The notes beneath the pieces were generated by a model. It searched no databases, had not been told where the DNA came from, and worked only from the letters and a program-made list of their open reading frames with translations. Of a DNA stretch of 64,000 bases, positions 505 to 44,745 are shown in pieces. How positions within the stretch are numbered: the first letter of the stretch is position 1; each line of letters opens with the position of its first letter. The stretch comes from Macrostomum lignano (Eukaryota): contig NIVC01000890.1 of NCBI GenBank assembly GCA_002269645.1, positions 124,001 through 188,000 on the forward strand. Direction: 5' to 3'. The position numbers and the translations under genes are program-made.

Positions 505-798
505 AGTCAGGCATGGTAACCCTTAGGGAAAAATCCGCAGTGAGGAATGCCCAGTGTGCCTCTCCGGTGTCGAGAATGCAGAGCACTTCATCTGTGAATG
601 CCCCGCCTTTACTCAGGACAGGCTCACCTATCTTGGCCCAAACCCGAACCTCTCCGACGTTCACAGGCTCGAGAACCTCTGCCCAGATAGTCTGCTATCT
701 AAGGGCTACCAACGGCCGGGAGCGACCATCCACTTCCTGGACTCTTCAGAGGAGGACCGCGCTGCATCCGCTGCATCCCTGCAGCTGTGTCAAGTTAA
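505..798 (+). mobile_element. 5'-truncated, decayed 3' remnant of a LOA-like non-LTR retrotransposon
   Basis: Frame from 542 reads EECPVCLSGVENAEHFICECPAFTQDRLTYLGP, homologous to CSFCNSGDETAEHFVSICPAFTRARLTYLGP at the end of ORF2 of the element at 1518-7419. Ends in ccctgcagct..gtcaagt like that element's 3' end. In-frame TAG at 524. Confidence 0.8.
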
Positions 799-1323: not shown

Positions 1324-1517
1324 GTCAGAAGAGTCGCTAAACTTTATGTCAGGTTGTCAGAAGAGTCGCTAAACTTTATGTCAGGTTGTCAGAAGAGTCG
1401 CTAAACTTTATGTCAGGTTGTCAGAAGAGTCGCTAAACTTTACGTCAGGTTGTCAGAAGAGTCGCTAAACTTTACGTCAGGTTGTCAGAAGAGTCGCTAA
1501 ACTTTACGTCAGGTTGT
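1324..1517. repeat. 32-bp minisatellite, left part (GTCAGAAGAGTCGCTAAACTTTAYGTCAGGTT)n
   Basis: About 6 near-perfect units with period 32; the array resumes at 7420 after the LINE. Confidence 0.97.
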
Positions 1518-1806
1518 GCACGCGAAGGCGTATTCAGCATGCCAGTGAAGTATGAGACAGACTAGGCCCATGGGCTAAGGTCTGCGATGCTTCACGCCTG
1601 CCCCTATCTTCAGCAGGTCAAGGCTGGTGGGAGGTCTGCACCCTCTATTTGCCTCTGGCAGCCGCAGACCCCCCCCCCCCACGCTGTCTCGCAAGTCGAC
1701 CCAGGGTACTCGTCCCCGCGTGTGTTCAAGGCAGTCCCTAGGGCTGCTGGACAGACTGGGCTCCGGCGCTGGCGACCCTATCCAGTGGCTTCGGCCGAAT
1801 TTGGGT
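1518..1806 (+). ncRNA. HDV-like self-cleaving ribozyme at the LINE 5' end (predicted)
   Basis: P1 GCACGCG 1518-24 / CGCGUGU 1717-23 (G1-U wobble); P2 ACCCA 1699-1703 / UGGGU 1802-06; P3 GGG 1704-06 / CCC 1714-16; L3 UACUCGU; P1.1 A1708-U1725 and C1709-G1724; J4/2 C1796-G-A-A-U. G1 is the first base after the TSD. Confidence 0.85.
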
Positions 1807-2038
1807 ATGCGGGTCTGGCTCGCCAACCTGCAGGCCGTGGTACTGCTCAACGTACTCTCTAATGCCTAAGGTGTTGACCGTGCCGATGGGCTGGAAGGCC
1901 GGGGAGTAGTCCGGTCGCAAGCGGTCCCCCTCCTGGTGTCGGGCCAGCCTTGAGGGTGCTATTGGCCTACTGCCCGGTCAGGTGGAGCGGCCGGGTGGGT
2001 ACCGCGCCCCTTTGAGGGTAGCCCACCAACCTTTTATC

Positions 2039-3559
2039 ATGGCCTTCGAGCCGACTATGGATAAACAAGCTATTTCTAGGGACGGGGACCCTTCTAAACC
2101 CCAACCTCAGTCCGAAGGACCGGCCGGCCCTGCTGGCAGATCCCAACCGACTGATTCAACTGTGGCAAAGGAAGGACCGGCTGGCTCTGCTGGCAGATCC
2201 GACCAGAGCTACCAAACTCAAAATACCCTAAGACCTGCCAGCTCCGCTGGTGGATCTAAGGGAACCGCGAGCTCTGAGCCTAAAGGACCGGCCAAATCTG
2301 GCAGATCCGATGAAGCTCAGCGGGCTCGGCTTGAGCGCAAACGCGCTAAACAACGCGCCAAAAGGCAGGCCAAGAAGGGAGCTGCGGGGGCCAAAGCGGC
2401 GGCGTCCACCATGGATGCTGAAGCGACTGGAGTCCCAAGGCAACCAGGCGGGCCGGCCGGTGGAAGCTCCAGTAGTTCAGCGGCGGCGCTCCCTGGAGCT
2501 GCTGCCGCGGCTGCTGAGGCCGAAACCACGGCGCAACAAATGGCCACTGCCAACAAGGAGGTTCCTTCGGGAGCTACCTTTGCGGCGAAGGCCAAGGCCA
2601 AAATCCCGGGAGTGATCATCCAAGGTCGCGACCAGGACTGGACCACTGATCAGCTTCAAAAAGTGTGGAGTGCTGTTGACTCCTATCTGATTGAGCTGAC
2701 TGTCGAGGAGGGAATCTCCATCGGCGTTGAGCGGATGGTGCTGCGAAGCACATTCGTTCTTATTGCTCCTAGCAGCGAGGAGGACGCTCGGCGGCTGCTC
2801 CAGCGGCTACCGACGGTCTCCTTGGATGCTGACCTTGGTGGAGCTCTTTTTCTTCGCGAGGGCCAGCGTCCAAAGACGATACCCTATGTGGTTTTCGTCC
2901 CTGCTAAGAGCACCGCAGCTGGACCAGACGTTATTCGCCGGGTCCTACTGCGTCTGAACCCCGACCTCCCTGCTAGTGGACTGGTGTATCACCGCAAAGT
3001 CCGCAGGGGGGAGACGGGCAACTCAATTGTCCTCGGCCTTTCCAGCACTTGGGCGAGTCGGTACCCTAATGGATCCTCTTTCCAGCTGGGTGCCCTCAAG
3101 CTCAAGTTGCGCCGAGGAAAGTCTGCCAAAGGGAAGGCTACTGCCAACCCCGGCATCTCCGGCAAGAGCGGGGCGCAGTCTAAGGCCCAAGGAAAGGCGC
3201 AAGCCGATCCCAAAGCCAAAGCTGCATCTCGCCCCTCTGCTAGCAGCAGTTCGGCGACCGCGGTAACGGCTCCGGCCGAGCCCCGGGAACCAAACCTGCC
3301 AGTCGGAGAAGGAGTTGAGGACGAGGCCGGGTCTTCGGAATCCGAGCTCTCCTCGGCCACCTTGGTGGGGTCTGAAGGTAAAGATGCAGGTGAGGAAGCT
3401 TCCTCCATCCTGTCATCGGAGCCTGAGGACTCTGCTGGGGGGCCGGTGGGGGTGAGGAGGCCATGGACGTCGACCAACTCCCATCTCCCAGTCAAGCCCC
3501 AGCGGCCTGGGACGAGGACGATCTGTTGTCCAAGTCTCCTTGATGGCCCTGGGCTCTAG
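2039..3559 (+). CDS. LINE ORF1 protein (low-complexity basic/acidic termini, central DUF4780-like domain, no CCHC knuckle)
   Basis: Open frame 1982-3559 with first ATG at 2039 (MAFEP). The central segment VLLRLNPDLP...GNSIVLGL...FQLGALKLKLR resembles LOA ORF1 domains (recalled similarity, not searched). A possible -1 slip in the G5 run at 3448-52 would give an acidic C-terminus ending at 3543. Confidence 0.8.
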   Translation: MAFEPTMDKQAISRDGDPSKPQPQSEGPAGPAGRSQPTDSTVAKEGPAGSAGRSDQSYQTQNTLRPASSAGGSKGTASSEPKGPAKSGRSDEAQRARLERKRAKQRAKRQAKKGAAGAKAAASTMDAEATGVPRQPGGPAGGSSSSSAAALPGAAAAAAEAETTAQQMATANKEVPSGATFAAKAKAKIPGVIIQGRDQDWTTDQLQKVWSAVDSYLIELTVEEGISIGVERMVLRSTFVLIAPSSEEDARRLLQRLPTVSLDADLGGALFLREGQRPKTIPYVVFVPAKSTAAGPDVIRRVLLRLNPDLPASGLVYHRKVRRGETGNSIVLGLSSTWASRYPNGSSFQLGALKLKLRRGKSAKGKATANPGISGKSGAQSKAQGKAQADPKAKAASRPSASSSSATAVTAPAEPREPNLPVGEGVEDEAGSSESELSSATLVGSEGKDAGEEASSILSSEPEDSAGGPVGVRRPWTSTNSHLPVKPQRPGTRTICCPSLLDGPGL

Positions 3560-3582: not shown

Positions 3583-6500
3583 ATGACTAAGCTCCACGCT
3601 GCCAAAGGAGCGACATTCTGTCTGCAAATAAATTTACAGCATTGCGTATCTGCGTCAGTAAATCTGATGAAGATTGCTGAGCTGTACAGGCCAGGCCTCA
3701 TCCTGATCCAGGAACCCTGGATGCGCAACGGTAAGTTGCCCAACATTCCCTCTGGCTACTCTGATTTTTATGTGTGTGGCCCGGGGAACAGCCGCCCTAG
3801 AGCGGCTATCCTCGCTGCTAGCCATCTCCAGGCTTGGCTGAGGACTGATCTCTCTGATGGAGACCTTTGCGTCATCCAATCTAATCATTTCTCTCCGCGT
3901 ACGTGTCTTGTTGCCTCGGTTTATATCCCAGGCGACAGAGACCCTGCTCCGAGAGTTTACTGCGCCTTGCGCAGTACTGCGAGTCCCAGAACGCTGAGCT
4001 GTGCTTAGGGGGCGACCTCAACGCGCACCACAAGCACTGGGGCAGCAAAGATACCAACACTAGAGGAGAGGAGCTTCTGGCCCTCATCTCTAACACAAAC
4101 CTCATGCTCTGCAACCGCGGCAGCACTCCTACCTTTAATAATGGCAGATGGACCGAGGTCCTCGACGCCACACTCGTTACCCCAAGACTCTTTGACAGAG
4201 TCAAGGAGTGGAGAGTCTGGTCTGAGGAGCCCTCCCTGTCTGACCACTGCTTTATCGCCTTTAATATCGCGGACACTAAAACCCAGTCTCCGATCACTTG
4301 GAGACGCAATATCCGCAACACTGATTGGGCGGCCTACAAGGCTGCCCTTGATCTGCACCTGCAGGAACTCACGGACTTACGTCCGATTGAGACCTGCGAG
4401 GATGTGGATCATATGGCTGAGACGCTGACAGGTTGCATTATTGCAGCCTACGAAGCGGCTTGTCCTGCTCGCGCCTACAGAGGCAAGACCTCGGCGCCGT
4501 GGTGGAACCCGGAGCTGGGGAAACTCAGGCGGAAGGCCAAAAGCCTTCATCGCCGTGCCATGAAGACCGGAAACCCGGAGGACATGGAGCTTTTCCGGCA
4601 AGCCTCCCGCAATTTCAAATCTGAAGTGCGCAAGGCCAAGGAATGTAAGTGGCGCCAATTCTGCAATGAATTGGATCAAGACAGACCTACTTCTAGGCTT
4701 GTCAAGGCCCTTACAATGGACAAAATGTCCAAATTAGCCATGATAAAAAAGATGATGGCTCTCTTACTAAAGACCCTGAAGAAGTGCTTCAGCATATGCT
4801 TAGCACATTCTTCCCGAGGGTACCTACTGCTAGACCGGAGCCCAACCATTCGATGGATGGAGCCACCCTAGCGGCGGGCATTGTCACTGAAGACCTAATC
4901 GCTCGTGCGGTCAGAACCTTCAAACCCTTCAAATCTCCTGGACCTGATGGTATCTACCCTGTTCTCCTTCGTGAAGCAGCCAAGATACCCTCGTTCCTGA
5001 GACTCACCCGCAATCTTATGCGGGCCTCTATCCAGCTGGGATACGTTCCCAAAAGCTGGACTGAAGCTCGAGTAGTCTTTATTCCCAAACCTGGGAAGGG
5101 TGACTACCAAAGCGTCAAGGCCTTCCGGCCAATTAGCTTAACGTCAGCAATGCTTAAGCTCACTGAGAGGCTTATTCTCTGGCGGCTGCTCTCCTGCGAG
5201 CTGACAGCGATGCCCCTCAGCAATAATCAGCACGCCTTCCGTACCGGGAGGTCGACTGACAGCGCCCTGCATGCGATTGTCGAAAAGATTGAACGGGCGG
5301 TACTGGGTGACGGTTACGCCCTGGCTCTCTTTCTTGACATTGTTGGCGCCTTCGACAACGTTATCTTTGAAGCGTTTCAGAGGGCCCTTCAAAATCGCAA
5401 AGCTCATGCTACCCTCATACGGTGGATCATGTACATGATCTCCAACCGTACGGTCACTGCCCAACTTCTTGGGCAAACTGCCTCCACCAGAGTCTGTAAG
5501 GGTGGACCCCAAGGCGGAGTCCTCACCCCGACGCTCTGGAACCTGGTCATGGACGCTCTTCTGAGTGACTCCCGACCTGACCCCGTCTTCAAAGTCGGGT
5601 ATGCTGATGACGTCACGGCCATTGTGGCAGGACCGTCTCCCAGCACGCTCAGGGATCTGATGCAGAGCTTTATCCGCAAAGCAGAATCCTGGGCCAATGA
5701 CAATGGTTTGGAACTCTCTGAGCCCAAAACCGTTGCCATTATGTTTACCAGCAGACTACGCTGGAACATACGTCCTCTGCAGCTCTACGGCAGAGATATT
5801 GCCTTCGCGCACCAGACCAGATGTCTCGGGGTCACACTTGACCACCGGCTCAACTGGTCCTTCCACGTGAAAGCAAAAGCTAAGCGTGCCTCAGCCATCC
5901 TGGCCCAGCTCCGACGAGCACTTGGCACTTCTTGGGGTCTATCCCCAAAGCGGCTTTGGTGGATCTATACTTCCGTAGTTAGACCTGCCATTACGTACGC
6001 CTCTGTTGTCTGGGTTAGCGCTACCCAGGTCAAAAGCCATGCAGACCTGCTCAACACGATCCAAGGCAGAGCGTGTAGGCTCATCTGCAACGCCACCAGG
6101 TCCACGCCCTTTGCTGGCATGGGGGCCTTTCTTAATCTTCCGCCTCTTGACCTCTTCATCAGGGGTGAGGCGGCTAGAACGACGCGGCGTCTAATTGATG
6201 CCGGCGTCAAATTCATTTACATGAGAGCACCTGCTAAGCGGAACCTTGTCCCGCATAGCGATCTGTGCCTCAACTTTCTCAACGAGTGTCAGGCCAATCG
6301 CGTCTTCACCGATGGCATTGCCTCAACGCTCAACCTGAGACAGCGCTACTCCGTAGCTATCGACTCGCGCGATAACATCAATGACCATTGGAACCCTGGT
6401 GAGCTTCATTGCTACACCGACGGTTCTAAGCAGTCAGCCAACACCGGCTTTGGTGTTGGAATCTTTCTGAACGGGAGGGTCATCGCTACCCACGCTCAAT

Positions 6501-7321
6501 ACACTGGGGTCAACTCCAGTGTTTTCCAAAATGAAGTTCTGGCCATCAGCTCCTGCACTGCAGAGCTTCTCGCCACTGGCGTTACTGGTAAGAACATCAT
6601 TTTCCATTCGGACAGCCAAGCTGCCTTGCACGCCATCAGTGGCTGCAGCACCAACTCTGCTACAGTCCTTGACTGTATCAAACTCCTCAATGTGTTGGGT
6701 TCCGCCAACAAAATTACCCTTAAGTGGGTTCCGGGGCATGTGGGGATCCGAGGAAATGAGTTGGCTGACACCCTTGCAAAAGTTGGTGCCTCCGGCTCCT
6801 CTCTCGGCCCCGAACCTCTTGTCCCGATTCCTGGCTGTGTCATCGACTCGCGCATCAAAGCGTGGATCAGGACTCAGCACCGCTCGACTTGGGCGAACCG
6901 CACGAACTGCAGGCAATCCAGAGGCGCTGTCCCTCAGCCCTCTCACCAGCTCCGGAAGCTCCTCTTGCGCCTCTCGCGCAGAGACATCCGGGCTGCCACC
7001 ATGACCCTCTCTGGTCACGGCTGCTTCTCCAGGCACCAGTACCTGCAGGGCAACGCCACCAACGCCACCTGTAGTTTCTGCAACTCAGGTGACGAAACCG
7101 CTGAGCATTTCGTCAGCATCTGTCCCGCCTTCACGCGGGCCAGACTCACTTACCTCGGGCCACACACATCTATTACTGAAGCGTGCAAACCCGAAAACTT
7201 TAATCAGCTCATGCGCTACCTTCGGGCCACCCGCAGGGCTGAACTCTCCTTTCCAGAGAGCACCATAGCTGCTGGCGACACTGGGGGACCTCCCTGGGCG
7301 GCGCCAACCCTCCGTCCATAG
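3583..7321 (+). CDS. LINE ORF2 polyprotein: AP endonuclease - reverse transcriptase - RNase H - CCHC, with two 1-nt frameshifts
   Basis: APE motifs QINLQH, IQEPW, GGDLNAHH, LDATL and SDH; RT; RNase H YTDGSK, SDSQAAL and WVPGHVGIRGNELADTLAK. Frames join by adding one base at about 3950 (ctcc|gag) and one in the A6 run at 4745-50. Confidence 0.93.
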
Positions 7322-7419
7322 CGACGCGTCGGCCGTTCAGGGACTAGCGGAATGGGCGCCCGCGCCTTCCCGCTGTGTCCCCTCCGGGACAGCCCTGCAG
7401 CTAAGTCAAGTAAGTCAAG

Positions 7420-7850
7420 TACGTCAGGTTGTCAGAAGAGTCGCTAAACTTTATGTCAGGTTGTCAGAAGAGTCGCTAAACTTTACGTCAGGTTGTCAGA
7501 AGAGTCGCTAAACTTTACGTCAGGTTGTCAGAAGAGTCGCTAAACTTTATGTCAGGTTGTCAGAAGAGTCGCTAAACTTTATGTCAGGTTGTCAGAAGAG
7601 TCGCTAAACTTTATGTCAGGTTGTCAGAAGAGTCGCTAAACTTTACGTCAGGTTGTCAGAAGAGTCGCTAAACTTTATGCCAGGTTGTCAGAAGAGTCGC
7701 TAAACTTTATGTCAGGTTGTCAGAAGAGTCGCTAAACTTTATGTCAGGTTGTCAGGAGAAAAGCTAAAATTTATGTCAGGTTGTCAGAAGAGTCGCTAAA
7801 CTTATGTCAGGTTGTCAGAAGAGTCGCTAAAATTTATGTCAGATGTCAGG
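7420..7850. repeat. 32-bp minisatellite, right part
   Basis: About 13 units of the same monomer as 1324-1517, decaying at the right end. Confidence 0.97.
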
Positions 7851-7963
7851 AGAGAAAACAAACCTAAAATCAGGAGATGCGCAAACTAATTTTAGTAAAT
7901 GGATATTCGTGCTCAGGTGACAACCGTACATTCATGCCCAACAAAGAAGCGCAGCTGTCTCAC

Positions 7964-35500: not shown

Positions 35501-38500
35501 GTTGATCGTGTTCGCCAATGGACGGGTGAGCTAAGCTAAGCTAAGTGTCATTAGTTATTATTCTCCTGACCGGAAATGATTTCGTAGGAAATAGCAGTTC
35601 AGACTGTAGGTGGCTTATGATAATCCCTATGGATAACAGTTCAGACTGGAAGTGCCCCCTGATAATCTATTTGGATAACAGTTAAGACTGGAAGTGGCCC
35701 CTGATAATCTATTTGGATAACAGTTTAGACCGGAAGTGGCCCCTGATAATCTATTTGGATAACAGTTTAGACCGGAAGTGGCCCCTGATAATCTATTTAG
35801 ATAACAGTTTAGACCGAAAGTGGCCCCTGATAATCTATTTGGATAACAGTTTAGACCGTAAGTGGCCCCTGATAATCTATTTGGATAACAGTTTAGACCG
35901 GAAGTGGCCCCTGATAATCTATTTGGATAACAGTTTAGACCGGAAGTGGCCCCTGATAATCTATTTGGATGACAGTTCAGACCGGAAGTGGCTCCTGATA
36001 ATCACTATGGATAAAAGTTCAGACCGGAAGTGGTCTTGATAATCCCTATGAATAGCAGTTCAGACCAGAAGTGGCCCCTGATGATACATACGAATAGTAG
36101 TTCTGACCGGAAGTGGCCTATGCTAGCTAGCTACTATGGATTATAGTTCGTGCTGTAACTGGTTTGACAAGACACAATTAACAGTATTGTGAAAATGTCT
36201 ATTTATAATTTTTTAAATTTTTATTTATAATCTCAAGTGAATCTCACTGTCATCTATCTAACTGGTTACAGATTGGCGTCAACGCAGAACACAGTTGGTA
36301 AGTTTTATATAAAAGTTGTATTTTATTGCTATTTATTTTACGGAAATTTTAGTGATAATAAAAAAAGCTTACCTTACTACTTTAGGGCCGATGCTCCAGT
36401 AATGTCGCAATTGTGGGAAGAGGCTGTCATCACCTATGACATTGTGCCAGACACTGGGTAATTCCATAATTTCATTTACCCGCTTAGGACTAAATTTCTA
36501 CGAAAATCCTCACATTTGTACTTAAAGTAGCTCGTTAATTTTTCAGCAAATATTTTAGTTGACATGTCTACTTGAATATTTTTATGCTTTTAGATACACT
36601 GCGACGGGTCATTGCAAGGGCACACCGAAAGGCCCCGTGCCCAACCCCATCCGCCTCCAGTGGGACCTCAACGACGCCTGTCGCTCCGTCATCGCCAGCC
36701 AGCTTCGCGTTGCCACCGACCTGCTGAACGACGTCGACCTTCACCTGGTCGTCCACCGGCAGTTCGGCAAAGGCGCCATGAAGCGCTGCTCGATGAGCCC
36801 CGACGCGTTCATCCAGCTGGCCCTGCAGCTGGCGTACTTCAGGGACAGCGGCGGCGAGTTCTGCCTGACCTACGAGGCCTCCATGACCCGGCTGTTCAAG
36901 GAGGGCCGCACGGAGACCGTCCGGTCCTGCACCAACGAGTCGTGCGCGTTTGTTCGCGCTATGGAAAGCGGCGCAAGCGTGAGTTTCACCTGCGGCGCTG
37001 TGCAACTGGTTCTCGATAGGCTACTGACAGTAGAAAGTACAGTAAAATGTAGCCTAGACTTAATTAGTTAGTAATCGAATTACATTACTGACAGTAATAA
37101 GTAAAGTAAAATGTAGCCTTAATTTAAATTATTTAAATTAGTGAGAAAAAACTAATTACACTACTGACAGTAGAAAGTAAAATAAAATGTAGCCTTGAAT
37201 TTAAATTATTTCAATTAGTGAGAAAAAAAACTAATTACACTACTGACAGTAGAAAGTTAAGTTCAAATTTAATTATTAATAAAATCTAACTACAATTACA
37301 CTACTGACAGAAAAAAGTACAGTCAAAATGTAGCTTTATTTTGATTAGCAAGAAATTTGAAATTCCAGTAGAAACTAGATTCAATTGAAACAAATAGTGA
37401 TTATACTTATATGAATAGTAGTTAAGTTATTTGAAAGTATTATAATTTAAATGTGTACTTTATTAGTCAAGTAGAACACTAAGAGTTAAAAGAAAAAATA
37501 ACCGACCTAAACTATATATTACTAGTCATTTTATATTTATTCTACTCATAGTAGACGTGAAAGGTAATATGTATAGGTACGATAATATGTAAACTATGTT
37601 TCCATTTTGTAAGTAAGATTTTTGTTTTCTTAGTACTCTTAAATTAGGGGACATCCATCCAATATCGGTATTTAGCAATGTCTGTTAGTTGTCACTTTGG
37701 TAATTTCGATAAGTGCCGGCGTGTAAGATGACTTTTATCTGTTTGATTGTGTTTAATCTTTAATCCTCTTAGTTAATAATTACTAATCATAATTCAGGTG
37801 CTTTGGAATTTAAGATTTCCATTAGTTGGATAATCGTAGACTCGTAGACTGCCCTTAGATTGATGTTTTTAGTCAGCAGGCAAAAATCTGTGGGATTTGT
37901 GAATTCATAAATCTGTAGGATTGGTGAATTGGTGAATCTGTAGGATTAATGAATTGGTGAATCTGTAAGATTAATGAATTGGTGAACCTGTAAGATTGGT
38001 GAATTGGTGAATCTGTAGGATTAATGAATTGGTGAATCTGTAAGATTAATGAATTGGTGAACCTGTAAGATTGATGAATTGGTGAATCTGTAAGATTAAT
38101 GAATTGGTGAATCTGTAAGATTGATGAATTGGTGAATCTGTAAGATTAATGAATTGGTGAATCTGTAAGATTAATGAATTGGTGAACCTGTAAGATTGGT
38201 GAATTGGTGAATCTGTAGGATTAATGAATTGGTGAATCTGTAAGATTAATGAATTGGTGAATCTGTAGGATTAATGAATTGGTGAATCTGTAAGATTAAT
38301 GAATTGGTGAATCTGTAAGATTAATGAATTGGTGAATCTGTAAGATTGATGAATTGGTGAATCTGTAGGATTAATGAATTGGTGAATCTGTAAGATTAAT
38401 GAATTGGTGAACCTGTAAGATTGGTGAATTGGTGAATCTGTAGGATTAATGAATTGGTGAACCTGTAAGATTGATGAATTGGTGAATCTGTAAGATTAAT

Positions 38501-41475
38501 GAATTGGTGAACCTGTAAGATTGATGAATTGGTGAATCTGTAAGATTAATGAATTGGTGAATCTGTAAGATTAATGAATTGGTGAATCTGTAAGATTAAT
38601 GAATTGGTGAACCTGTAAGATTGATGAATTGGTGAATCTGTAAGATTAATGAATTGGTGAACCTGTAAGATTGATGAATTGGTGAATCTGTAAGATTAAT
38701 GAATTGGTGAATCTGTAAGATTAATGAATTGGTGAATCTGTAAGATTAATGAATTGGTGAACCTGTAAGATTGATGAATTGGTGAATCTGTAAGATTAAT
38801 GAATTGGTGAACCTGTAAGATTGATGAATTGGTGAATCTGTAAGATTAATGAATTGGTGAATCTGTAAGATTAATGAATTGGTGAATCTGTAAGATTAAT
38901 GAATTGGTGAATCTGTAAGATTAATGAATTGGTGAATCTGTAAGATTAATGAATTGGTGAATTTGTAAGATTGATGAATTGGTGAATTTGTAAGATTAAT
39001 GAATTGGTGAACCTGTAAGATTGATGAATTGGTGAATCTGTAAGATTAATGAATTGGTGAATCTGTAAGATTAATGAATTGGTGAATCTGTAAGATTAAT
39101 GAATTGGTGAATCTGTAAGATTAATGAATTGGTGAATCTGTAAGATTAATGAATTGGTGAATCTGTAAGATTAATGAATTGGTGAATCTGTAAGATTAAT
39201 GAATTGGTGAATCTGTAAGATTAATGAATTGGTGAATCTGTAAGATTGATGAATTGGTGAATCTGTAAGATTAATGAATTGGTGAGTCTGTAAGATTAAT
39301 GAATTGGTGAATCTGTAAGATTAATGAATTGGTGAATCTGTAAGATTGATGAATTGGTGAACCTGTAAGATTGATGAATTGGTGAATCTGTAAGATTGAT
39401 GAATTGGTGAATCTGTAAGATTGATGAATTGGTGAATCTGTAAGATTGATGAATTGGTGAATTTGTAAGATTGATTAATTGGTGAATCTGTAAGATTGAT
39501 GAATTGGTGAATCTGTAAGATTGATGAATTGGTGAATCTGTAAGCTATACAAGATTATAATGCACCCTATTGATGCAGCAGATCATAGCGAGGTGAAGAA
39601 AAGTAGGAAAAGATTAATAGCTGCTGGGGAAGATTTTACACCGCCTTTTGCCAACTAAAAGTAAGTAAACGGGAGTCACAATAAATACCTATTGCAATCC
39701 TACAGTTCAGCAATTAGCTAAATAATAGGGCAAGTAAAACAGCCCACAAAAGACTAGAAGAAAATGCTATTGTTGCCAGAGAAATATCAAAGCTTTGTAT
39801 CGGAATTTATTTTGTTATTATAACGAACTGTAGCTATAACTACACTCCAATCTCTCCTTACGAGACTAAGCTAGTGCAAGTGGCGGCCTATCGGTTAATT
39901 TAAATTGGCTCTTTACTTACTCAAACTGTCTCTTTTTTTTCCAGAATGAGGAAGTTGTCCGCCTGCTCCGGCAAGCCTCGGAGAAGCACCAGACAATGTA
40001 CCGGGACGCCATGACTGGCAAAGGCGTGGACCGGCACCTGTTCACTCTGTACGTGGTGTCCAAGTACTGCAAGACCCAGTCGCCTTTCCTGGAGAAGGCG
40101 CTGCACTGCCAGTGGAAGCTGTCCACCTCGCAGACTCCGCACGGACAGACTAGCAAAATGGATTTGCACAAGAATCCGGATTTCTTGAGCGCCGGTGGCG
40201 GCTTCGGGCCCGTGTCTCACGACGGTTACGGTGTGTCCTACATCATTGCTGGGGAGGACACCGTCTTCTTCCATGTTAGCAGCCGCGTCAGCTCGGATAA
40301 AACGGTTCGTGTAGCTTTTGCTGTGCCTTAAATCCTCAGATGTTAGATCCTCAGATCCCAGATCCTCAGATGTCAGATCCTCAGATCCGAGATCCTCAGA
40401 TCCCAGATCCTCAGATCCCAGATCCCAGATCCTCAGATCCCAGATCCTCAGATCCCAGATCCTCAGATCCCAGATCCTCAGATCCCAGATCCTCAGATCC
40501 CAGATCCTCAGATCCCAGATCCTCAGATCCCAGATCCTCAGATCCCAGATCCTCAGATCCCAGATCCTCAGATCCCAGATCCTCAGCCTCCCAGATCCTC
40601 AGATCCCAGATCCTCAGATCCCAGATCCTCAGATCCCAGATCCTCAGATCCCAGATCCTCAGATCCCAGATCCTCAGATCCCAGATCCTCAGATCCCAGA
40701 TCCTCAGATCCCAGATCCTCAGATCCCAGATCCTCAGATCCCAGATCCTCAGATCCCAGATCCTCAGATCCCAGATCCTCAGATCCCAGATCCTCAGATC
40801 CCAGATCCTCAGATCCCAGATCCTCAGATCCCAGATCCTCAGATCCCAGATCCTCAGATCCCAGATCCTCAGATCCCAGATCCTCAGATCCCAGATCCTC
40901 AGATCCCAGATCCTCAGATCCCAGATCCTCAGATCCCAGATCCTCAGATCCCAGATCCTCAGATCTCAGATCCTTAGTTCCCTAGTCCTTAGGTCATGGG
41001 TCCTCAGACTCCAGATCCTAGTTCTTGAGATCCCAGCTCCCAGATGTCAGATCCCAGCTCCCAGATGTCAGATCCCAGCTCCCAGATGTCAGATCCCAGC
41101 TCCCAGATGTCAGATCCCAGCTCCCAGATGTCAGATCCCAGCTCCCAGATGTCAGATCCCAGCTCCCAGATGTCAGATCCCAGCACCCAGATGTCAGATC
41201 CCAGCTCCCAGATGTCAGATGTCAGATCCCAGATTCCAGATTCTCAGTTCCTAAAATCTTACGCGCTCGTATGCTAAATTTCAAGATTGTGCGATCCCTA
41301 AATTGCATTCCTAGTTCCTAAATCCCGAAATCTCCCGAATCTCAGTCAAGCGATCCTGATGTTGCAGTGCACACACTGTTCCTAGCTAATGCACTAATCA
41401 ATCATTTTGCAGGACTCCCGTCGATTCGGCGAGCAGATCTGCCGGGCTCTGCTGGATGTGAAAAATCTGTTTTGA
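32273..41475 (+). CDS. CPT1: Carnitine O-palmitoyltransferase 1, paralog A, 767 aa: join(32273-32550, 32948-33302, 34231-34555, 35086-35525, 36272-36297, 36386-36457, 36594-36978, 39945-40304, 41413-41475)
   Basis: MAEAHQAV N-terminus, two TM segments, [16 protein letters not shown], catalytic [34 protein letters not shown]. All introns are GT-AG and phase-compatible; 2304 nt. Confidence 0.95.
32948..33302 (+). CDS. CPT1: CPT1-A exon 2
   Basis: CAG|YLGVV...YHGWMYE...LAAEFQ|GTGGGT. Confidence 0.9.
33495..34200. repeat. 22-bp minisatellite (AGAGGTAGCTACACAGGTAGAT)n, CPT1-A intron 2
   Basis: Direct reading. Confidence 0.95.
34231..34555 (+). CDS. CPT1: CPT1-A exon 3
   Basis: CAG|STGIARKLQ...TTRIPG|GTGAG. 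Confidence 0.92.
34570..34990. repeat. 22-23-bp minisatellite (TTCAAGATTAAAAGTGCCATTT)n, CPT1-A intron 3
   Basis: Direct reading. Confidence 0.9.
35086..35525 (+). CDS. CPT1: CPT1-A exon 4
   Basis: CAG|EERDYL...RWFDKS...ANGR|GTGAG. Confidence 0.94.
35595..36120. repeat. 42-bp minisatellite (GATAACAGTTTAGACCGGAAGTGGCCCCTGATAATCTATTTG)n, CPT1-A intron 4
   Basis: Direct reading. Confidence 0.93.
36272..36297 (+). CDS. CPT1: CPT1-A exon 5 (26-nt micro-exon, catalytic His)
   Basis: CAG|IGVNAEHSW|GTAAG. Confidence 0.92.
36386..36457 (+). CDS. CPT1: CPT1-A exon 6
   Basis: TAG|[11 protein letters not shown]...PDTG|GTAAT. Confidence 0.9.
36594..36978 (+). CDS. CPT1: CPT1-A exon 7
   Basis: TAG|YTATGHC...SPDAFIQ...TYEASMTR...SGAS|GTGAGT. 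Confidence 0.94.
37910..39545. repeat. 25-bp minisatellite (TGTAAGATTAATGAATTGGTGAATC)n, CPT1-A intron 7
   Basis: About 65 units. Confidence 0.97.
39945..40304 (+). CDS. CPT1: CPT1-A exon 8
   Basis: CAG|NEEVV...DRHLF...GGFGPV...SSDKT|GTTCGT. Confidence 0.92.
40332..40975. repeat. 15-bp minisatellite (CAGATCCTCAGATCC)n, CPT1-A intron 8
   Basis: Direct reading. Confidence 0.97.
41030..41240. repeat. 21-bp minisatellite (CAGATGTCAGATCCCAGCTCC)n, CPT1-A intron 8
   Basis: Direct reading; related to the adjacent 15-mer. Confidence 0.93.
41413..41475 (+). CDS. CPT1: CPT1-A exon 9
   Basis: CAG|[20 protein letters not shown], homologous to the CPT1 C-terminal helix. Confidence 0.88.
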   Translation, partial: DSRRFGEQICRALLDVKNLF

Positions 41476-41807: not shown

Positions 41808-44745
41808 ATCCATATGGTTGGTTAGATTAGCAATCCATTCTATTCCATCATTCCTATGGTTGGTTAGATTAGCAATCCATTCTATTCCATCATTCATATG
41901 GTTGGTTAGATTAGCAATCCATTCTATTCCATCATTCATATGGTTGGTTAGATTAGCAATCCATTCTATTCCATCATTCATATGGTTGGTTAGATTAGCA
42001 ATCCATTCTATTTTATTATTCATATGGTTGGTTAGATTAGCAATCCATTCTATTCCATCATTCCTATGGTTGGTTAGATTAGCAATCCATTCTATTCCAT
42101 CATTCATATGGTTGGTTAGATTAGCAATCCATTCTATTCCATCATTCATATGGTTGGTTAGATTAGCAATCCATTCTATTTTATTATTCATATGGTTGGT
42201 TAGATTAGCAATCCATTCTATTCCATCATTCCTATGGTTGGTTAGATTAGCAATCCATTCTATTCCATCATTCATATGGTTGGTTAGATTAGCAATCCAT
42301 TCTATTCCATCATTCATATGGTTGGTTAGATTAGCAATCCATTCTATTTTATTATTCATATGGTTGGTTAGATTAGCAATCCATTCTATTCCATCATTCC
42401 TATGGTTGGTTAGATTAGCAATCCATTCTATTCCATCATTCATATGGTTGGTTAGATTAGCAATCCATTCTATTCCATCATTCATATGGTTGGTTAGATT
42501 AGCAATCCATTCTATTCCATCATTCCTATGGTTGGTTAGATTAGCAATCCATTCTATTCCATCATTCCTATGGTTGGTTAGATTAGCAATCCATTCTATT
42601 CCATCATTCATATGGTTGGTTAGATTAGCAATCCATTCTATTCCATCATTCATATGGTTGGTTAGATTAGCAATCCATTCTATTCCATTATTAATATGGT
42701 TGGCTAGATTAGCAATCCATTCTATTCCATCATTTATATGGTTGGCTAGATTAGCAATCCATTCTATTTCATTATTAATATGGTTGGCTAGATTAGCAAT
42801 CCATTCTATTCCATCATTTATATGGTTGGTTAGATTAGCAGTCCATTCTATTCCATCATTTATATGGTTGGTTAGATTAGCAGTCCATTCTATTCCATTA
42901 TTTATATGGTTGGTTAGATTAGCAGTCCATTCTATTCCATCATTTATATGGTTGGTTAGATTAGCAATCCATTCTATTCCATCATTTATATGGTTGGTTA
43001 GATTAGCAATCCATTCTATTCCATGATTTATATGGTTGGTTAGATCAGCAATCCATTCTATTCCATCATTTAAATGGTTGGTTAGATTAGCAGTCCATTC
43101 TATTCCATAATTTATATGATTGGTTAGATTAGCAGTCCATTCTATTCCATCATTTATATGGTTGGTTAGATTAGCAGTCCATTCTATTCCATCATTTATA
43201 TGATTGGTTAGATTAGCAGTCCATTCTATTCCATCATTTATATGGTTGGTTAGATTAGCAATCCATTCTATTCCATCATTTATATGGTTGGTTGGGGGCC
43301 GTAGCCCAGCGGTAGCGCAGCTGCTCTGGTGTGCCGCAACCCAGGCTCGATTCCAAGTGCAGCCACATTAATTTGGGGCTGGATTGGAATCTTGGCTTGG
43401 TTCGCTTGTGCAATTAACGGCCTTGAGAGCCAACCCCCCAAGGCGCAGTGAAGTGTACATGCCTAACAATTGATAAAGTTAGGGCCGCTGTACACTCCTG
43501 TGTGAGTGTGTGCCTGCGTAACGTATCCGCGCGCTTGTATGCCTGCTCAGGGGAGTCGGCGGAATGGGCAGTAATGCCTCTCGCCGGTTGTGTGCCTATG
43601 TCGCTTAAAGTGCGCCGGGGTGCACACAACCCCCTTGCCTCTAATAAAAAAAAATAAAAAATTATATGCTTGGTTAGATTAGCAGTCCATTCTATTCCAT
43701 CATTTATATGGTTGGTTAGATTAGCAATCCATTCTATTCCATCATTTATATGATTGGCTAGATTAGCAATCCATTCTAATTCATTATTCATATGATTGCC
43801 TAGATTAGCAATCCATTCTGTTTCATCGTTTATATGGTTGGTTAGATTAGCAATCCATTCTATTTCATTATTAATATGGTTGGCTAGATTAGCAATCCAT
43901 TCTATTCCATCATTTATATGGTTGGCTAGATAAGCAATCCATTCTATTCCATCATTTATATGGTTAGTAAGATTAGCAATCCATTTAATTCCATCATTCA
44001 TATGATTGACTAGATTAGCGATCCATTCTATTCTATCGTTTATATGTTTGGCTAGGTTAGCAATCCATTCTGTTCCATCATTTATATGGTTAACTAGATT
44101 AGCAATCCATTATATTCCATCATTTATATGGTTGGTTAGATTAGCAGTCCATTCTATTCCATCATTTATATGGTTGGTTAGATTAGCAGTCCATTCTATT
44201 CCATCATTTATATGGTTGGTTAGATTAGCAGTCCATTCTATTCCATCATTTATATGGTTGGTTAGATTAGCAGTCCATTCTAATTCATTATTCATATGAT
44301 TGCCTAGATTAGCAATCCATTCTGTTCCATCGTTTATATGGTTAACTAGATTAGCAATCCATTATATTCCATCATTTATATGGTTGGTTAGATTAGCAGT
44401 CCATTCTATTCCATCATTTATATGGTTGGTTAGATTAGCAGTCCATTCTATTCCATCATTTATATGGTTGGTTAGATTAGCAGTCCATTCTATTCCATCA
44501 TTTATATGGTTGGTTAGATTAGCAGTCCATTCTAATTCATTATTCATATGATTGCCTAGATTAGCAATCCATTCTGTTCCATCGTTTATATGGTTGGCTA
44601 GATTAGCAATCCATTCTATTCCATTATTTACATGGTTGGCTAGATTAGCAATCCATTCAATTCCATCATTTATATGGTTGGTTAGATTAGCAGTCCATTC
44701 TATTCCATCATTTATATGGTTGGTTAGATTAGCAATCCATTCATC
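41808..44745. repeat. 42-bp satellite (TATGGTTGGTTAGATTAGCAATCCATTCTATTCCATCATTCA)n, interrupted by a SINE
   Basis: About 60 units between the two CPT1 genes. Confidence 0.97.
43294..43661 (+). mobile_element. tRNA-derived SINE, full-length copy
   Basis: tRNA-like head GGGGCCGTAGCCCAGCGG, A box 43302-12, B box GGCTCGATTCC 43344-54, A-rich tail, 14-bp TSD TTATATG(G/C)TTGGTT at 43280-93 and 43662-75; second copy at 55440. Confidence 0.92.

What the first reader, a model, noticed from the sequence alone, without database searches (positions are those of the whole stretch)
1518..1806. HDV-like ribozyme whose cleavage site is exactly the LINE 5' end, with a non-canonical A-U P1.1
Seen: every element of the nested double pseudoknot occurs in the right order. 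P1 is GCACGCG/CGCGUGU with the hallmark G1-U wobble; P2 is ACCCA/UGGGU; P3 is GGG/CCC; L3 UACUCGU keeps the U20 and G25 equivalents; a CAA segment follows P1.1; J4/2 CGAAU carries the catalytic C (1796). The 175-nt J1/2 folds into its own stems (AGGCGU 1526-31/ACGCCU 1594-99, GAAGUAU/AUGCUUC, CAGAC/GUCUG). G1 (1518) is the first base after the independently defined TSD. In place of the canonical C21C22/G38G39, P1.1 is A1708C1709/G1724U1725, a compensatory swap. Established: HDV-like ribozymes process the 5' ends of R2, RTE and L1Tc elements and, as I recall, some LOA-clade ones. Inference: this element frees its own 5' end from read-through transcripts and may use the fold for ORF1 translation; the A-U P1.1 variant would be missed by standard motif descriptors.
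Basis: partly seen in the sequence, partly recalled or inferred. Interest (0 to 1): 0.9.

Follow-up and report, generated by a model that had tools for sequence, protein, structure and literature searches.

The report
HDV-like ribozyme at flatworm LINE start
A jumping gene (LINE) in this flatworm DNA begins exactly at the predicted cutting site of a hepatitis-delta-like self-cleaving RNA fold that a distant relative also keeps through matching base changes.

Summary
The window is Macrostomum lignano DNA. A 5.9-kb LINE (1518 to about 7421; ORF1, then APE-RT-RNase H ORF2 with two frameshifts) sits in a 32-nt satellite. A 11-13 bp target-site duplication puts its first base at G1518. With G1 fixed at the first base, HDV descriptors match 9-19 of 40,000 dinucleotide shuffles, and 0-1 when the L3 U..CG signature is required.

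The only related element with DNA is L001 (ORF2 59%, ORF1 32% identical). Its contig starts at the homologous base. It keeps the same double pseudoknot with two-sided changes in P1, P2, P4 and both P1.1 pairs (A-U/C-G becomes C-G/U-A).

L001 supports a compact 3' half: P4 1730-1748, J4/2 1749-1756 (catalytic C probably C1752), P2 3' strand 1757-1760 plus a distal helix to 1767. The 174-nt J1/2 is a closed three-hairpin domain with a nearly invariant 41-nt block.

Verdict: a real HDV-like 5'-processing ribozyme and a new member of a known kind. Cleavage is untested, and the covariation rests on two sequences.

The parts
1505..1517 (+). Left copy of the target-site duplication (TACGTCAGGTTGT; minimal version 1507-1517), the last bases of the upstream 32-nt satellite array (1324-1517).
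1518..1524 (+). P1 5' strand GCACGCG. G1518 is the first base of the LINE and the predicted cleavage site (between U1517 and G1518).
   Evidence: The homologous base is the first base of contig L001.
1528..1692 (+). Structured J1/2 peripheral domain. Closing stems are 1528-30/1690-92 and 1535-38/1683-86, followed by three hairpins. Linkers are AAG 1525-27 and AA 1693-94.
   Evidence: Same architecture in L001, 7 compensatory pairs, z-scores -2.3 and -2.8.
1545..1595 (+). Long J1/2 hairpin. It contains the only block alignable by BLAST between the two 5' UTRs (1550-1590, 88% identical to L001 33-73).
1695..1703 (+). P2 5' strand: distal helix GUCG 1695-98, unpaired A1699, proximal helix CCCA 1700-03.
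   Evidence: L001 has the same layout (GCCG, C, CUCAGA).
1704..1716 (+). P3 (GGG 1704-06 / CCC 1714-16) enclosing L3 UACUCGU 1707-13. U1707, C1711 and G1712 correspond to HDV U20, C24 and G25. A1708 and C1709 are the 5' side of P1.1.
   Evidence: L001 has GGG UCUCCGU CCC.
1717..1723 (+). P1 3' strand CGCGUGU.
1724..1729 (+). P1.1 3' side, G1724 U1725 (pairs C1709-G1724 and A1708-U1725), then J1.1/4 UCAA.
   Evidence: L001 has AG then GCAA, and both P1.1 pairs covary.
1730..1748 (+). P4 hairpin, 8 bp (GGCAGUCC / GGGCUGCU) with loop CUA.
   Evidence: L001 has an 11-bp P4 of unrelated sequence at the same place.
1749..1756 (+). J4/2 GGACAGAC in the compact model. C1752, in the context C-A-G-A, is the most likely catalytic cytosine.
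   Evidence: Inferred by position from L001 (GCUGC) and from the published C-R-R-A descriptor (PMC6326823).
1757..1767 (+). P2 3' strand in the compact model: UGGG 1757-60, internal loop CUC 1761-63, distal CGGC 1764-67. This is the probable 3' end of the ribozyme.
   Evidence: L001 has UCUGAG, CAA, CGGC.
1796..1806 (+). It is present in this copy but has no counterpart in L001. C1796 lies in a predicted GGC-UUCG-GCC hairpin.
2039..3559 (+). LINE ORF1 (506 aa from the ATG; no Pfam match).
3583..7321 (+). LINE ORF2 (APE endonuclease, reverse transcriptase, RNase H), read in three frames. Frameshifts lie near 3951-3957 and 4730-4811.
7402..7421 (+). 3' tail (TAAGTCAAG)x2 plus TA. It is preceded by a 3' UTR block that aligns with L001 at 70% identity (window 7338-7409).
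7420..7432 (+). Right copy of the target-site duplication. The first two bases are ambiguous with the tail. It is followed by the rest of the satellite array, to 7854.

Best explanation
The first 243-250 nt of this Macrostomum lignano LINE (1518 to 1760-1767) encode a large HDV-like self-cleaving ribozyme. When the element is transcribed as part of a longer host or read-through transcript, the RNA folds into the nested double pseudoknot. The helices are P1 1518-24/1717-23, P2 1700-03/1757-60 with a distal extension 1695-98/1764-67, P3 1704-06/1714-16, P1.1 A1708-U1725 and C1709-G1724, and P4 1730-48. The closed 165-nt J1/2 domain holds P1 and P2 together. A J4/2 cytosine, most likely C1752, then catalyses scission 5' of G1518. 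The released RNA starts exactly at G1518, and target-primed reverse transcription copies it to its last base. New insertions therefore begin at G1 next to the TSD, as this copy does.

Shown here: the fold, its position at the element's first base, and its conservation with compensatory changes in one distant relative. Inferred: cleavage itself, which cytosine is catalytic, and any later role of the retained fold (translation or protein binding). This copy has two ORF2 frameshifts, so it is not autonomous, but all its ribozyme helices are intact.
For: 1. All helices form without a mismatch in the window and in L001.

2. Position. The TSD and the restored satellite phase fix the 5' end at G1518. 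With G1 fixed at base 1, descriptors match 19 of 40,000 shuffles (loose) and 1 of 40,000 (with L3 signature). The compact descriptor gives 9 and 0 of 40,000 for the window, and the same for L001. Only the 1704 core passes the strict scan of both strands of the window.

3. Conservation despite divergence. ORF1 is 32% and ORF2 58-59% identical between the two elements.
- L001 keeps GGG-U..CGU-CCC and the CAA after P1.1.
- P1 changes on both sides at two pairs: A-U to C-G, and C-G to U-A.
- Both P1.1 pairs change on both sides.
- The proximal P2 changes from CCCA/UGGG to CUCAGA/UCUGAG.
- The whole of P4 is replaced.

4. The L001 contig starts at the homologous base. The conserved block lies at offset 33-73 from the 5' end in both elements.

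5. J1/2 is a closed three-hairpin domain in both, with 7 compensatory pairs. Structured J1/2 domains are known to activate large HDV-like ribozymes (PMC4908430), and R2 ribozymes carry J1/2 loops of 216-498 nt (PMC3774820).

6. HDV-like ribozymes cleaving at the element 5' end are established for R2, R4, Dong, baggins, RTE and L1Tc (PMC3774820, PMC6765202).
Against: - No cleavage assay has been done.
- Covariation rests on two sequences only. The structural alignment was made by hand, and MAFFT misaligned the core.
- No Rfam HDV-type model matches.
- In the compact model the window's proximal P2 is only 4 bp and J4/2 is 8 nt.
- L001's J4/2 (GCUGC) lacks the terminal A of the C-N-R-A consensus.
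- The MFE fold of 1518-1810 does not contain P1. A local hairpin 1520-23/1528-31, and a downstream hairpin around 1759-1796, compete with P1 and with the P2 3' strand.
- Four more distant relatives (ORF2 31-37% identical) show no HDV motif upstream of ORF1.
- The L001 contig start could be an assembly break rather than an RNA end.
Confidence: 0.75

Rival explanations
1. The ribozyme is real but has the reader's extended 3' half. P4 is then a larger two-hairpin domain (1730-1795), C1796 in CGAAUU is the catalytic base, and UGGGU 1802-06 is the P2 3' strand. Alternatively, this copy can use either 3' half.
For: ACCCA/UGGGU gives 5 uninterrupted pairs, against 4 in the compact model. CGAAU is identical to the J4/2 of the genomic HDV ribozyme (my recollection of that sequence) and fits C-R-R-A (PMC6326823). 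My rough estimate is that a C-N-R-A motif plus a 5-mer complement would arise by chance within about 100 nt only about 1-2% of the time. P4 and the L4-J4/2 region are highly variable in R2 ribozymes (PMC3774820).
Against: L001 has no P2 complement downstream of position 232-237. It places the P2 3' strand 5 nt after a simple P4 hairpin. The window has the same layout, including the 1x3 internal loop and the 4-bp distal helix. The region 1770-1810 does not align with L001. C1796 is predicted to pair in a GGC-UUCG-GCC hairpin. About 47 nt would lie between P4 and the catalytic C.
Confidence: 0.12
2. The conserved fold is a non-catalytic 5' UTR structure, for example a binding site for the element's proteins or an IRES-like module. 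In this view the precise 5' end comes from an internal promoter that starts transcription at G1518.
For: Many LINEs use internal promoters that start at their first base (stated in PMC3774820). The best-conserved part is the J1/2 hairpin, not the core. In R2 the protein binds a pseudoknot inside the ribozyme region, and the fold is proposed to act as an IRES (PMC6765202). L001's J4/2 lacks the consensus A. This copy is defective.
Against: The conserved features are those specific to HDV catalysis: G1 at the start of P1, L3 U..CG, a P1.1 that covaries, CAA after P1.1, and a C in J4/2 directly after P4. A protein-binding element would not be expected to reproduce this whole topology anchored on base 1. 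Both functions can coexist, as in L1Tc, where promoter and ribozyme share the same 77 nt (PMC3383444).
Confidence: 0.1
3. The resemblance is a chance match in a GC-rich, highly structured 5' UTR, picked out after the fact.
For: Loose descriptors hit about 7 loci and 22 cores in the window. No Rfam family matches.
Against: Matches anchored at base 1 occur in only 2-5 of 10,000 shuffles, and in about 0 with the L3 signature. The same fold recurs at the homologous base in an element with 32% ORF1 identity, with compensatory changes in four helices.
Confidence: 0.02

Closest known systems
[quoted passage not shown]
   Same: The ribozyme occupies the first bases of the element, and the cleavage site equals the element's 5' end next to the TSD. 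The presumed role is release from read-through or host co-transcripts. Like this element, L1Tc encodes APE, RT and RNase H and has a TSD of usually 12 bp (PMC6765202, PMC3185411, PMC3774820).
   Different: L1TcRz is a minimal 77-nt ribozyme with a 1-bp P1.1 that overlaps an internal promoter. This one is about 250 nt with a 174-nt structured J1/2 and a 2-bp P1.1 of non-CC/GG composition. The host phylum (Platyhelminthes, Macrostomorpha) and the LINE family are different, and the element's clade was not determined here.
R2 retrotransposon ribozymes (Drosophila, silkmoths, planarian and others)
   Same: They are large HDV-like ribozymes with long J1/2 loops (216-498 nt in silkmoths), a variable P4 and a P2 of at least 5 bp, often with mismatches. 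P1.1, P3 and L3 are the conserved core, and P1 shows compensatory changes between species. In Drosophila, cleavage is exactly at the 5' junction (PMC3774820).
   Different: R2 has a restriction-like endonuclease, inserts site-specifically in 28S rDNA and is co-transcribed by Pol I. Most R2 elements cleave upstream, within the 28S sequence. This element has an APE endonuclease, makes a TSD, and shows no evidence of site specificity: the window holds dozens of different arrays, and L001 has an unrelated 3' flank.
drz-Agam-2 large HDV-like ribozymes (Anopheles gambiae)
   Same: A stable base-paired J1/2 (P1.2) domain with short linkers and an extended P2 brings P1 and P2 together and speeds up cleavage (PMC4908430). 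Here a closed J1/2 domain has 2-3 nt linkers, and P2 is extended by a distal helix.
   Different: The sequences are unrelated. The J1/2 here is a three-hairpin multiloop with a nearly invariant 41-nt block, and activation by it has not been tested.
Twister-variant ribozymes at the 5' end of Perere-3 (RTE) in the flatworm Schistosoma mansoni
   Same: This is also a flatworm LINE with a 5' self-cleaving ribozyme, a TSD directly beside the cleavage site and short tandem repeats at the 3' end (PMC8501958).
   Different: It belongs to a different ribozyme class (twister rather than HDV-like). In Perere-3 the TSD supplies part of P1, whereas here the whole ribozyme lies inside the element.

Membership tests
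HDV-like self-cleaving ribozymes (structural class) | Nested double pseudoknot in the order P1(5') - J1/2 - P2(5') - P3(5') - L3 - P3(3') - P1(3') - P1.1 - P4 - J4/2 - P2(3') | tested here: met
   All strands are in this order with no mismatched pair, in the window and in L001.
HDV-like self-cleaving ribozymes (structural class) | Cleavage site immediately 5' of the first nucleotide of P1, with a G1-Y closing pair | tested here: met
   G1518.U1723 in the window and G1-C194 in L001. G1518 is the TSD-defined first base. This row covers position only; the chemistry was not tested.
HDV-like self-cleaving ribozymes (structural class) | L3 signature U...C-G (HDV U20, C24, G25; fixed as U19, C23, G24 in published descriptors, PMC6326823) | tested here: met
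   UACUCGU in the window and UCUCCGU in L001. Requiring this signature brings shuffle matches to 0-1 of 40,000.
HDV-like self-cleaving ribozymes (structural class) | P1.1: one or two base pairs between L3 residues 2-3 and the nucleotides directly 3' of P1 | tested here: met
   A1708-U1725 and C1709-G1724 in the window; C180-G196 and U181-A195 in L001. Both pairs change on both sides.
HDV-like self-cleaving ribozymes (structural class) | Canonical identity of P1.1 (two C-G pairs, CC in L3 and GG after P1), as fixed in standard descriptors | tested here: not met
   The window has AC/GU and L001 has CU/AG. Natural exceptions are known: a 1-bp P1.1 in L1Tc (PMC3185411) and A at L3 residue 2 in one silkmoth R2 (PMC3774820).
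HDV-like self-cleaving ribozymes (structural class) | Catalytic cytosine in J4/2, in a C-N-R-A context, between P4 and the P2 3' strand | tested here: inconclusive
   The window has C1752-A-G-A plus one extra C before P2, or alternatively C1796-G-A-A plus UU. L001 has C228-U-G-C, with no terminal A. Which C is catalytic cannot be decided from sequence.
HDV-like self-cleaving ribozymes (structural class) | Compensatory base changes across homologues | tested here: met
   Two-sided changes occur in P1 (2 pairs), P1.1 (2), proximal P2 and P4, and no pair is broken. The test uses only two sequences and a hand-made structural alignment.
HDV-like self-cleaving ribozymes (structural class) | Divalent-ion-dependent self-scission giving 5'-OH and 2',3'-cyclic phosphate, abolished by mutating the catalytic C | not testable with these tools
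Rfam HDV-type families (curated covariance models for HDV-type ribozymes) | Match to a curated covariance model | tested here: not met
   No hit at the gathering threshold over the window. No HDV-type hit at E<=10 over 1300-2100. This is expected with a 174-nt J1/2 and a non-CC/GG P1.1.
APE-type non-LTR retrotransposon (LINE) with RNase H | ORF1 plus an ORF2 with APE endonuclease, RT and RNase H domains, a target-site duplication, and a 3' tail of short tandem repeats | tested here: met
   Pfam Exo_endo_phos(_2), RVT_1 and RNase_H. TSD of 11-13 bp. Tail (TAAGTCAAG)x2. The clade (I, LOA, Ingi, Nimb and so on) was not determined.
Site-specific LINE co-transcribed with its repeated target (R2-like logic) | All copies inserted at the same position of the same repeated host sequence | tested here: inconclusive
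   This copy sits in a 32-nt satellite. The window also holds dozens of unrelated arrays, there is no second copy in it, and L001's 3' flank is not that satellite.

The most novel reading that the evidence does not exclude
These flatworm LINEs may define a distinct subclass of large HDV-like ribozymes. In this subclass P1.1 would be free to take any Watson-Crick composition. The nearly invariant J1/2 hairpin (1545-1595) is far better conserved than ORF1. It would be an essential second function built into the ribozyme, for example the recognition site of the element's own proteins or an obligatory activating 'pinch' domain. The competing 5' hairpin (1520-31) and the downstream hairpin (about 1759-1796) would time cleavage or switch the cleaved RNA to a translation or packaging conformation.
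Probability: 0.2. Interest if true: 0.55.

Novelty: new member of a known kind. Interest (0 to 1): 0.36.

Why it matters
It adds a well-supported HDV-like 5'-processing ribozyme in a free-living flatworm (Macrostomum lignano, a laboratory model) and in an RNase H-containing APE LINE family. I found no published ribozyme for this organism; a search for 'Macrostomum' plus 'ribozyme' returned only an unrelated paper.

It shows natural covariation of both P1.1 pairs. Standard search descriptors fix these as CC/GG, so searches built that way under-count such ribozymes.

It gives a concrete, cheap test of which of two candidate cytosines is catalytic.

It points to a J1/2 hairpin that is much more conserved than the coding sequence and may be a protein-recognition or activating element.

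For genome annotation, it explains why full-length copies of this family should share one exact 5' end.

Tried and rejected
- **Rfam.** Gathering threshold over the whole window, and E<=10 over 1300-2100: no HDV-type hit.
- **Other copies in the window.** None by blastn. There are only short fragments of related LINEs at 509-679 (+) and 49403-49785 (-).
- **M. lignano genomic copies.**
  - ORF1 matches three UniRef chimeric gene models at 82-98% identity.
  - Neither two of these models (P0001, P0003) nor the window's own ORF1 has contig DNA on record.
  - A second search with the non-repetitive ORF1 core found nothing.
- **P0004.** This is the other ORF2 relative at 57% identity. Its contig DNA is not retrievable.
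- **Collection scans.**
  - The metagenome scan with the conserved J1/2 block found two bacterial chance matches.
  - The genome-contig scan with a longer pattern found nothing.
  - ORF1-profile scans of genome contigs and viral contigs found nothing.
- **More distant relatives.** L004, L006, L007 and L008 (ORF2 31-37% identical) show no HDV motif upstream of ORF1 with my descriptor. Their 5' ends are unknown, so this is inconclusive. L005 lacks the 5' end.
- **MAFFT alignment of the two 5' UTRs.** It misaligned the core, so I aligned by structure by hand.
- **Site-specificity for the 32-nt satellite.** Considered but not supported.
- **Ruminski et al. 2011 (JBC).** The paper could not be read. 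Its content is cited only through papers that cite it.

Full report
**What is in the window**

ORF1 of the element matches UniRef proteins of Macrostomum lignano at 82-98% identity, so the window is DNA of this free-living flatworm.

From 1518 to about 7421 on the + strand lies a LINE.
- The 5' UTR runs from 1518 to 2038.
- ORF1 is 2039-3559 (506 aa, no Pfam domain).
- ORF2 carries APE endonuclease, reverse transcriptase and RNase H domains. It is read in three frames: 3583-4008, 3903-4871 and 4784-7321.
- Comparison with an intact relative places the frameshifts near 3951-3957 and 4730-4811.
- The 3' tail is (TAAGTCAAG)x2 at 7402-7419.

The element interrupts a 32-nt satellite (1324-1517 and 7423-7854). 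TACGTCAGGTTGT occurs at 1505-1517 and again at 7420-7432. Removing the element plus one copy puts the array back in exact 32-nt phase.

**Check of the observation**

- P1 is GCACGCG / CGCGUGU, 7 bp, closed by G1518.U1723.
- P3 is GGG / CCC.
- L3 is UACUCGU.
- P1.1 is A1708-U1725 and C1709-G1724.
- UCAA follows P1.1.
- An 8-bp hairpin (1730-1748) follows the UCAA.
- CGAAUU lies at 1796-1801 and UGGGU at 1802-1806, complementary to ACCCA 1699-1703.

No Rfam family matches at the gathering threshold or at E<=10. That is unsurprising with a 174-nt J1/2.

*Chance.* Unanchored loose descriptors are not specific. They give about 7 loci in the window in one version and 22 cores in another. The real question is how often the fold starts at one predetermined base.
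- With G1 fixed at base 1, 19 of 40,000 dinucleotide shuffles of the 5' UTR match a loose descriptor. One of 40,000 matches when L3 must carry U1, C3 and G6.
- A compact descriptor that also requires a P4 hairpin and a short J4/2 matches 9 of 40,000. It matches none when the L3 signature is required.
- In the real window, only the core at 1704 passes the strict scan on either strand.

**Comparative evidence**

Genomic copies from M. lignano could not be reached. An ORF2 search found many relatives.
- The closest one with DNA is L001, a 6,492-nt Logan contig from run ERR14788467.
- Its ORF2 is 58-59% identical to the window's, and its ORF1 only 32%.
- BLAST aligns only one block of the two 5' UTRs: window 1550-1590 with L001 33-73, at 88% identity.
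- This block lies at the same offset, 33 to 73, from the 5' end in both. The L001 contig therefore begins at the base homologous to G1518.

Read by structure, L001 has the same double pseudoknot:
- P1 is G1-C6 / G189-C194.
- P3 is GGG / CCC.
- L3 is UCUCCGU.
- P1.1 is C180-G196 and U181-A195.
- GCAA follows P1.1.
- P4 is an 11-bp hairpin of unrelated sequence (201-226).
- J4/2 is GCUGC.
- P2 is CUCAGA / UCUGAG. It continues past a 1x3 internal loop into a 4-bp distal helix, GCCG / CGGC.

Relative to the window, L001 differs as follows:
- Two P1 pairs change on both sides (A-U to C-G, and C-G to U-A).
- Both P1.1 pairs change on both sides (A-U/C-G to C-G/U-A).
- The proximal P2 is replaced on both strands.
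- P4 is entirely different.
- No pair is broken in either sequence.

With G1 fixed at its first base, L001 gives the same shuffle statistics as the window: 9 of 40,000, and 0 with the L3 signature.

In L001 the P2 3' strand lies 5 nt after a simple P4 hairpin. No other complement of its P2 occurs in the roughly 110 nt scanned downstream of it.

The window has the same compact layout:
- P4 is 1730-1748.
- J4/2 is GGACAGAC (1749-1756).
- UGGG 1757-1760 pairs with CCCA 1700-1703.
- A 1x3 internal loop follows (A1699 opposite CUC 1761-63).
- A 4-bp distal helix closes it (GUCG 1695-98 / CGGC 1764-67).

The flanking sequences GCAAG and CGGCGC are conserved in both elements. C1752 sits in C-A-G-A, which fits the published C-R-R-A descriptor (PMC6326823).

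Its region does not align with L001. I therefore place the 3' end of the ribozyme at 1760-1767 and take C1752 as the likely catalytic base.

- L001's J4/2 ends in C rather than the consensus A.

**J1/2**

In both elements J1/2 folds into a closed domain: a closing stem, then three hairpins, with 2-4 nt linkers to P1 and P2. The z-scores are -2.3 and -2.8. RNAalifold finds 34 shared pairs, 7 of them compensatory.

The stem AGGCGU/ACGCCU is not conserved.

This matches published findings. Long J1/2 loops (216-498 nt) occur in silkmoth R2 ribozymes, and part of the loop is needed for activity (PMC3774820). A stable J1/2 helix with short linkers and an extended P2 accelerates Agam-2 ribozymes by nearly three orders of magnitude (PMC4908430).

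**Mechanism**

The best-supported reading is the established one for HDV-like ribozymes at LINE 5' ends. The element is transcribed within a longer RNA. The ribozyme cuts 5' of G1. The processed RNA is reverse-transcribed to its end, so new copies start at G1 next to the TSD.

This is documented for R2, R4, Dong, baggins, RTE and L1Tc (PMC3774820, PMC6765202, PMC3185411). The argument that a TSD beside the cleavage site indicates insertion of a cleaved RNA has been made for twister variants in Schistosoma Perere-3 (PMC8501958).

- Shown here: the fold, its anchoring on base 1, and its conservation.
- Inferred: cleavage, the catalytic base, and any role in translation.

**Rivals**

- A non-catalytic structured UTR with an internal promoter starting at G1: about 0.1. 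This is not exclusive of a ribozyme, as L1Tc shows (PMC3383444).
- Chance: about 0.02.

**Limits**

- There are only two sequences.
- The core alignment was made by hand.
- The L001 contig start may reflect assembly rather than an RNA end.
- Four more distant relatives (ORF2 31-37% identical) showed no motif upstream of ORF1, but their 5' ends are unknown.
- Scans of metagenomes, prokaryotic genomes and viral contigs gave no further family members.
- Site-specificity for the satellite is not supported. The window is packed with unrelated arrays, and L001 has a different 3' flank.

**Novelty**

This is a new member of a known kind. Three points go beyond the routine.
- Both P1.1 pairs covary naturally. 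Standard descriptors fix them as CC/GG, although weak or altered P1.1 is already known in L1Tc and in one silkmoth R2.
- The host is a free-living flatworm, and the LINE is an RNase H-containing family.
- The J1/2 hairpin is far more conserved than ORF1.

Noticed in passing
window 1520-1531; L001 2-15: The P1 5' strand can instead form a local hairpin with the bases just downstream. In the window this is A1520-C1523 / G1528-U1531 with loop GAAG. In L001 it is C2-C6 / G11-G15 with loop AAUG. The hairpin is kept with two-sided changes. It competes with P1 and with the J1/2 closing stem, so it could be a co-transcriptional folding intermediate or a post-cleavage conformation.
   Followed up: partly
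window about 1757-1798; L001 about 235-266: In both elements a hairpin just downstream overlaps the P2 3' strand. In the window G1759-U1762 pairs with G1793-C1796. In L001 GAGCAACG can pair with CGUUGCUU (my reading of the sequence). It could attenuate the ribozyme, as a downstream region does in L1Tc, or act as a switch after cleavage.
   Followed up: no
window 1899-1914, about 1950-2000; L001 450-469, about 515-560: Further short blocks conserved between the two 5' UTRs lie downstream of the ribozyme. One is a hairpin CCGG-GGAGUAnU-CCGG. Others are UUGGCyUACUGCC and GCGGC..GGUGGGUAC, just upstream of ORF1. In both elements the reading frame is open upstream of the ATG, from a GTG.
   Followed up: no
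window 7338-7409; L001 5882-5962; window about 760-810: The 3' UTR is conserved (70% identity over 81 nt). It includes a stem AGCGG...CCGCU and the terminal CCCTGCAGCTAAGTCAA. A similar 3' end (CCCTGCAGCTGTGTCAAGTTAAG) closes a 5'-truncated fragment of a related LINE at about 509-810. This is probably the site recognised by the reverse transcriptase.
   Followed up: partly
window 9287-62600: Most of the window consists of dozens of different minisatellite arrays (units of 12-214 nt, up to about 70 copies, for example 37885-39544, 41812-44742, 52559-54801) with little long ORF content. It looks like a satellite-rich, possibly heterochromatic, region.
   Followed up: no
window 49403-49785 (-): A short fragment of another related LINE ORF2, about 35% identical to L001 ORF2 residues 931-1057, lies between arrays.
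   Followed up: no
proteins P0001-P0003, P0007 (UniRef, M. lignano): Several UniRef gene models of M. lignano fuse pieces of this LINE's ORF1 or ORF2 to host-like domains (UBC9-like, GPCR, ABC transporter). These are probably annotation chimeras caused by LINE insertions in or near genes. One copy is only 82% identical, so the family has older members.
   Followed up: no
L001 5954-6492 (-): The 3' flank of L001 carries an antisense ORF (142 aa, no Pfam). The contig runs 520 nt past the element's 3' end but stops exactly at its 5' end. That would fit a transcript that starts at G1 and reads through the 3' end, but the library type is unknown.
   Followed up: no
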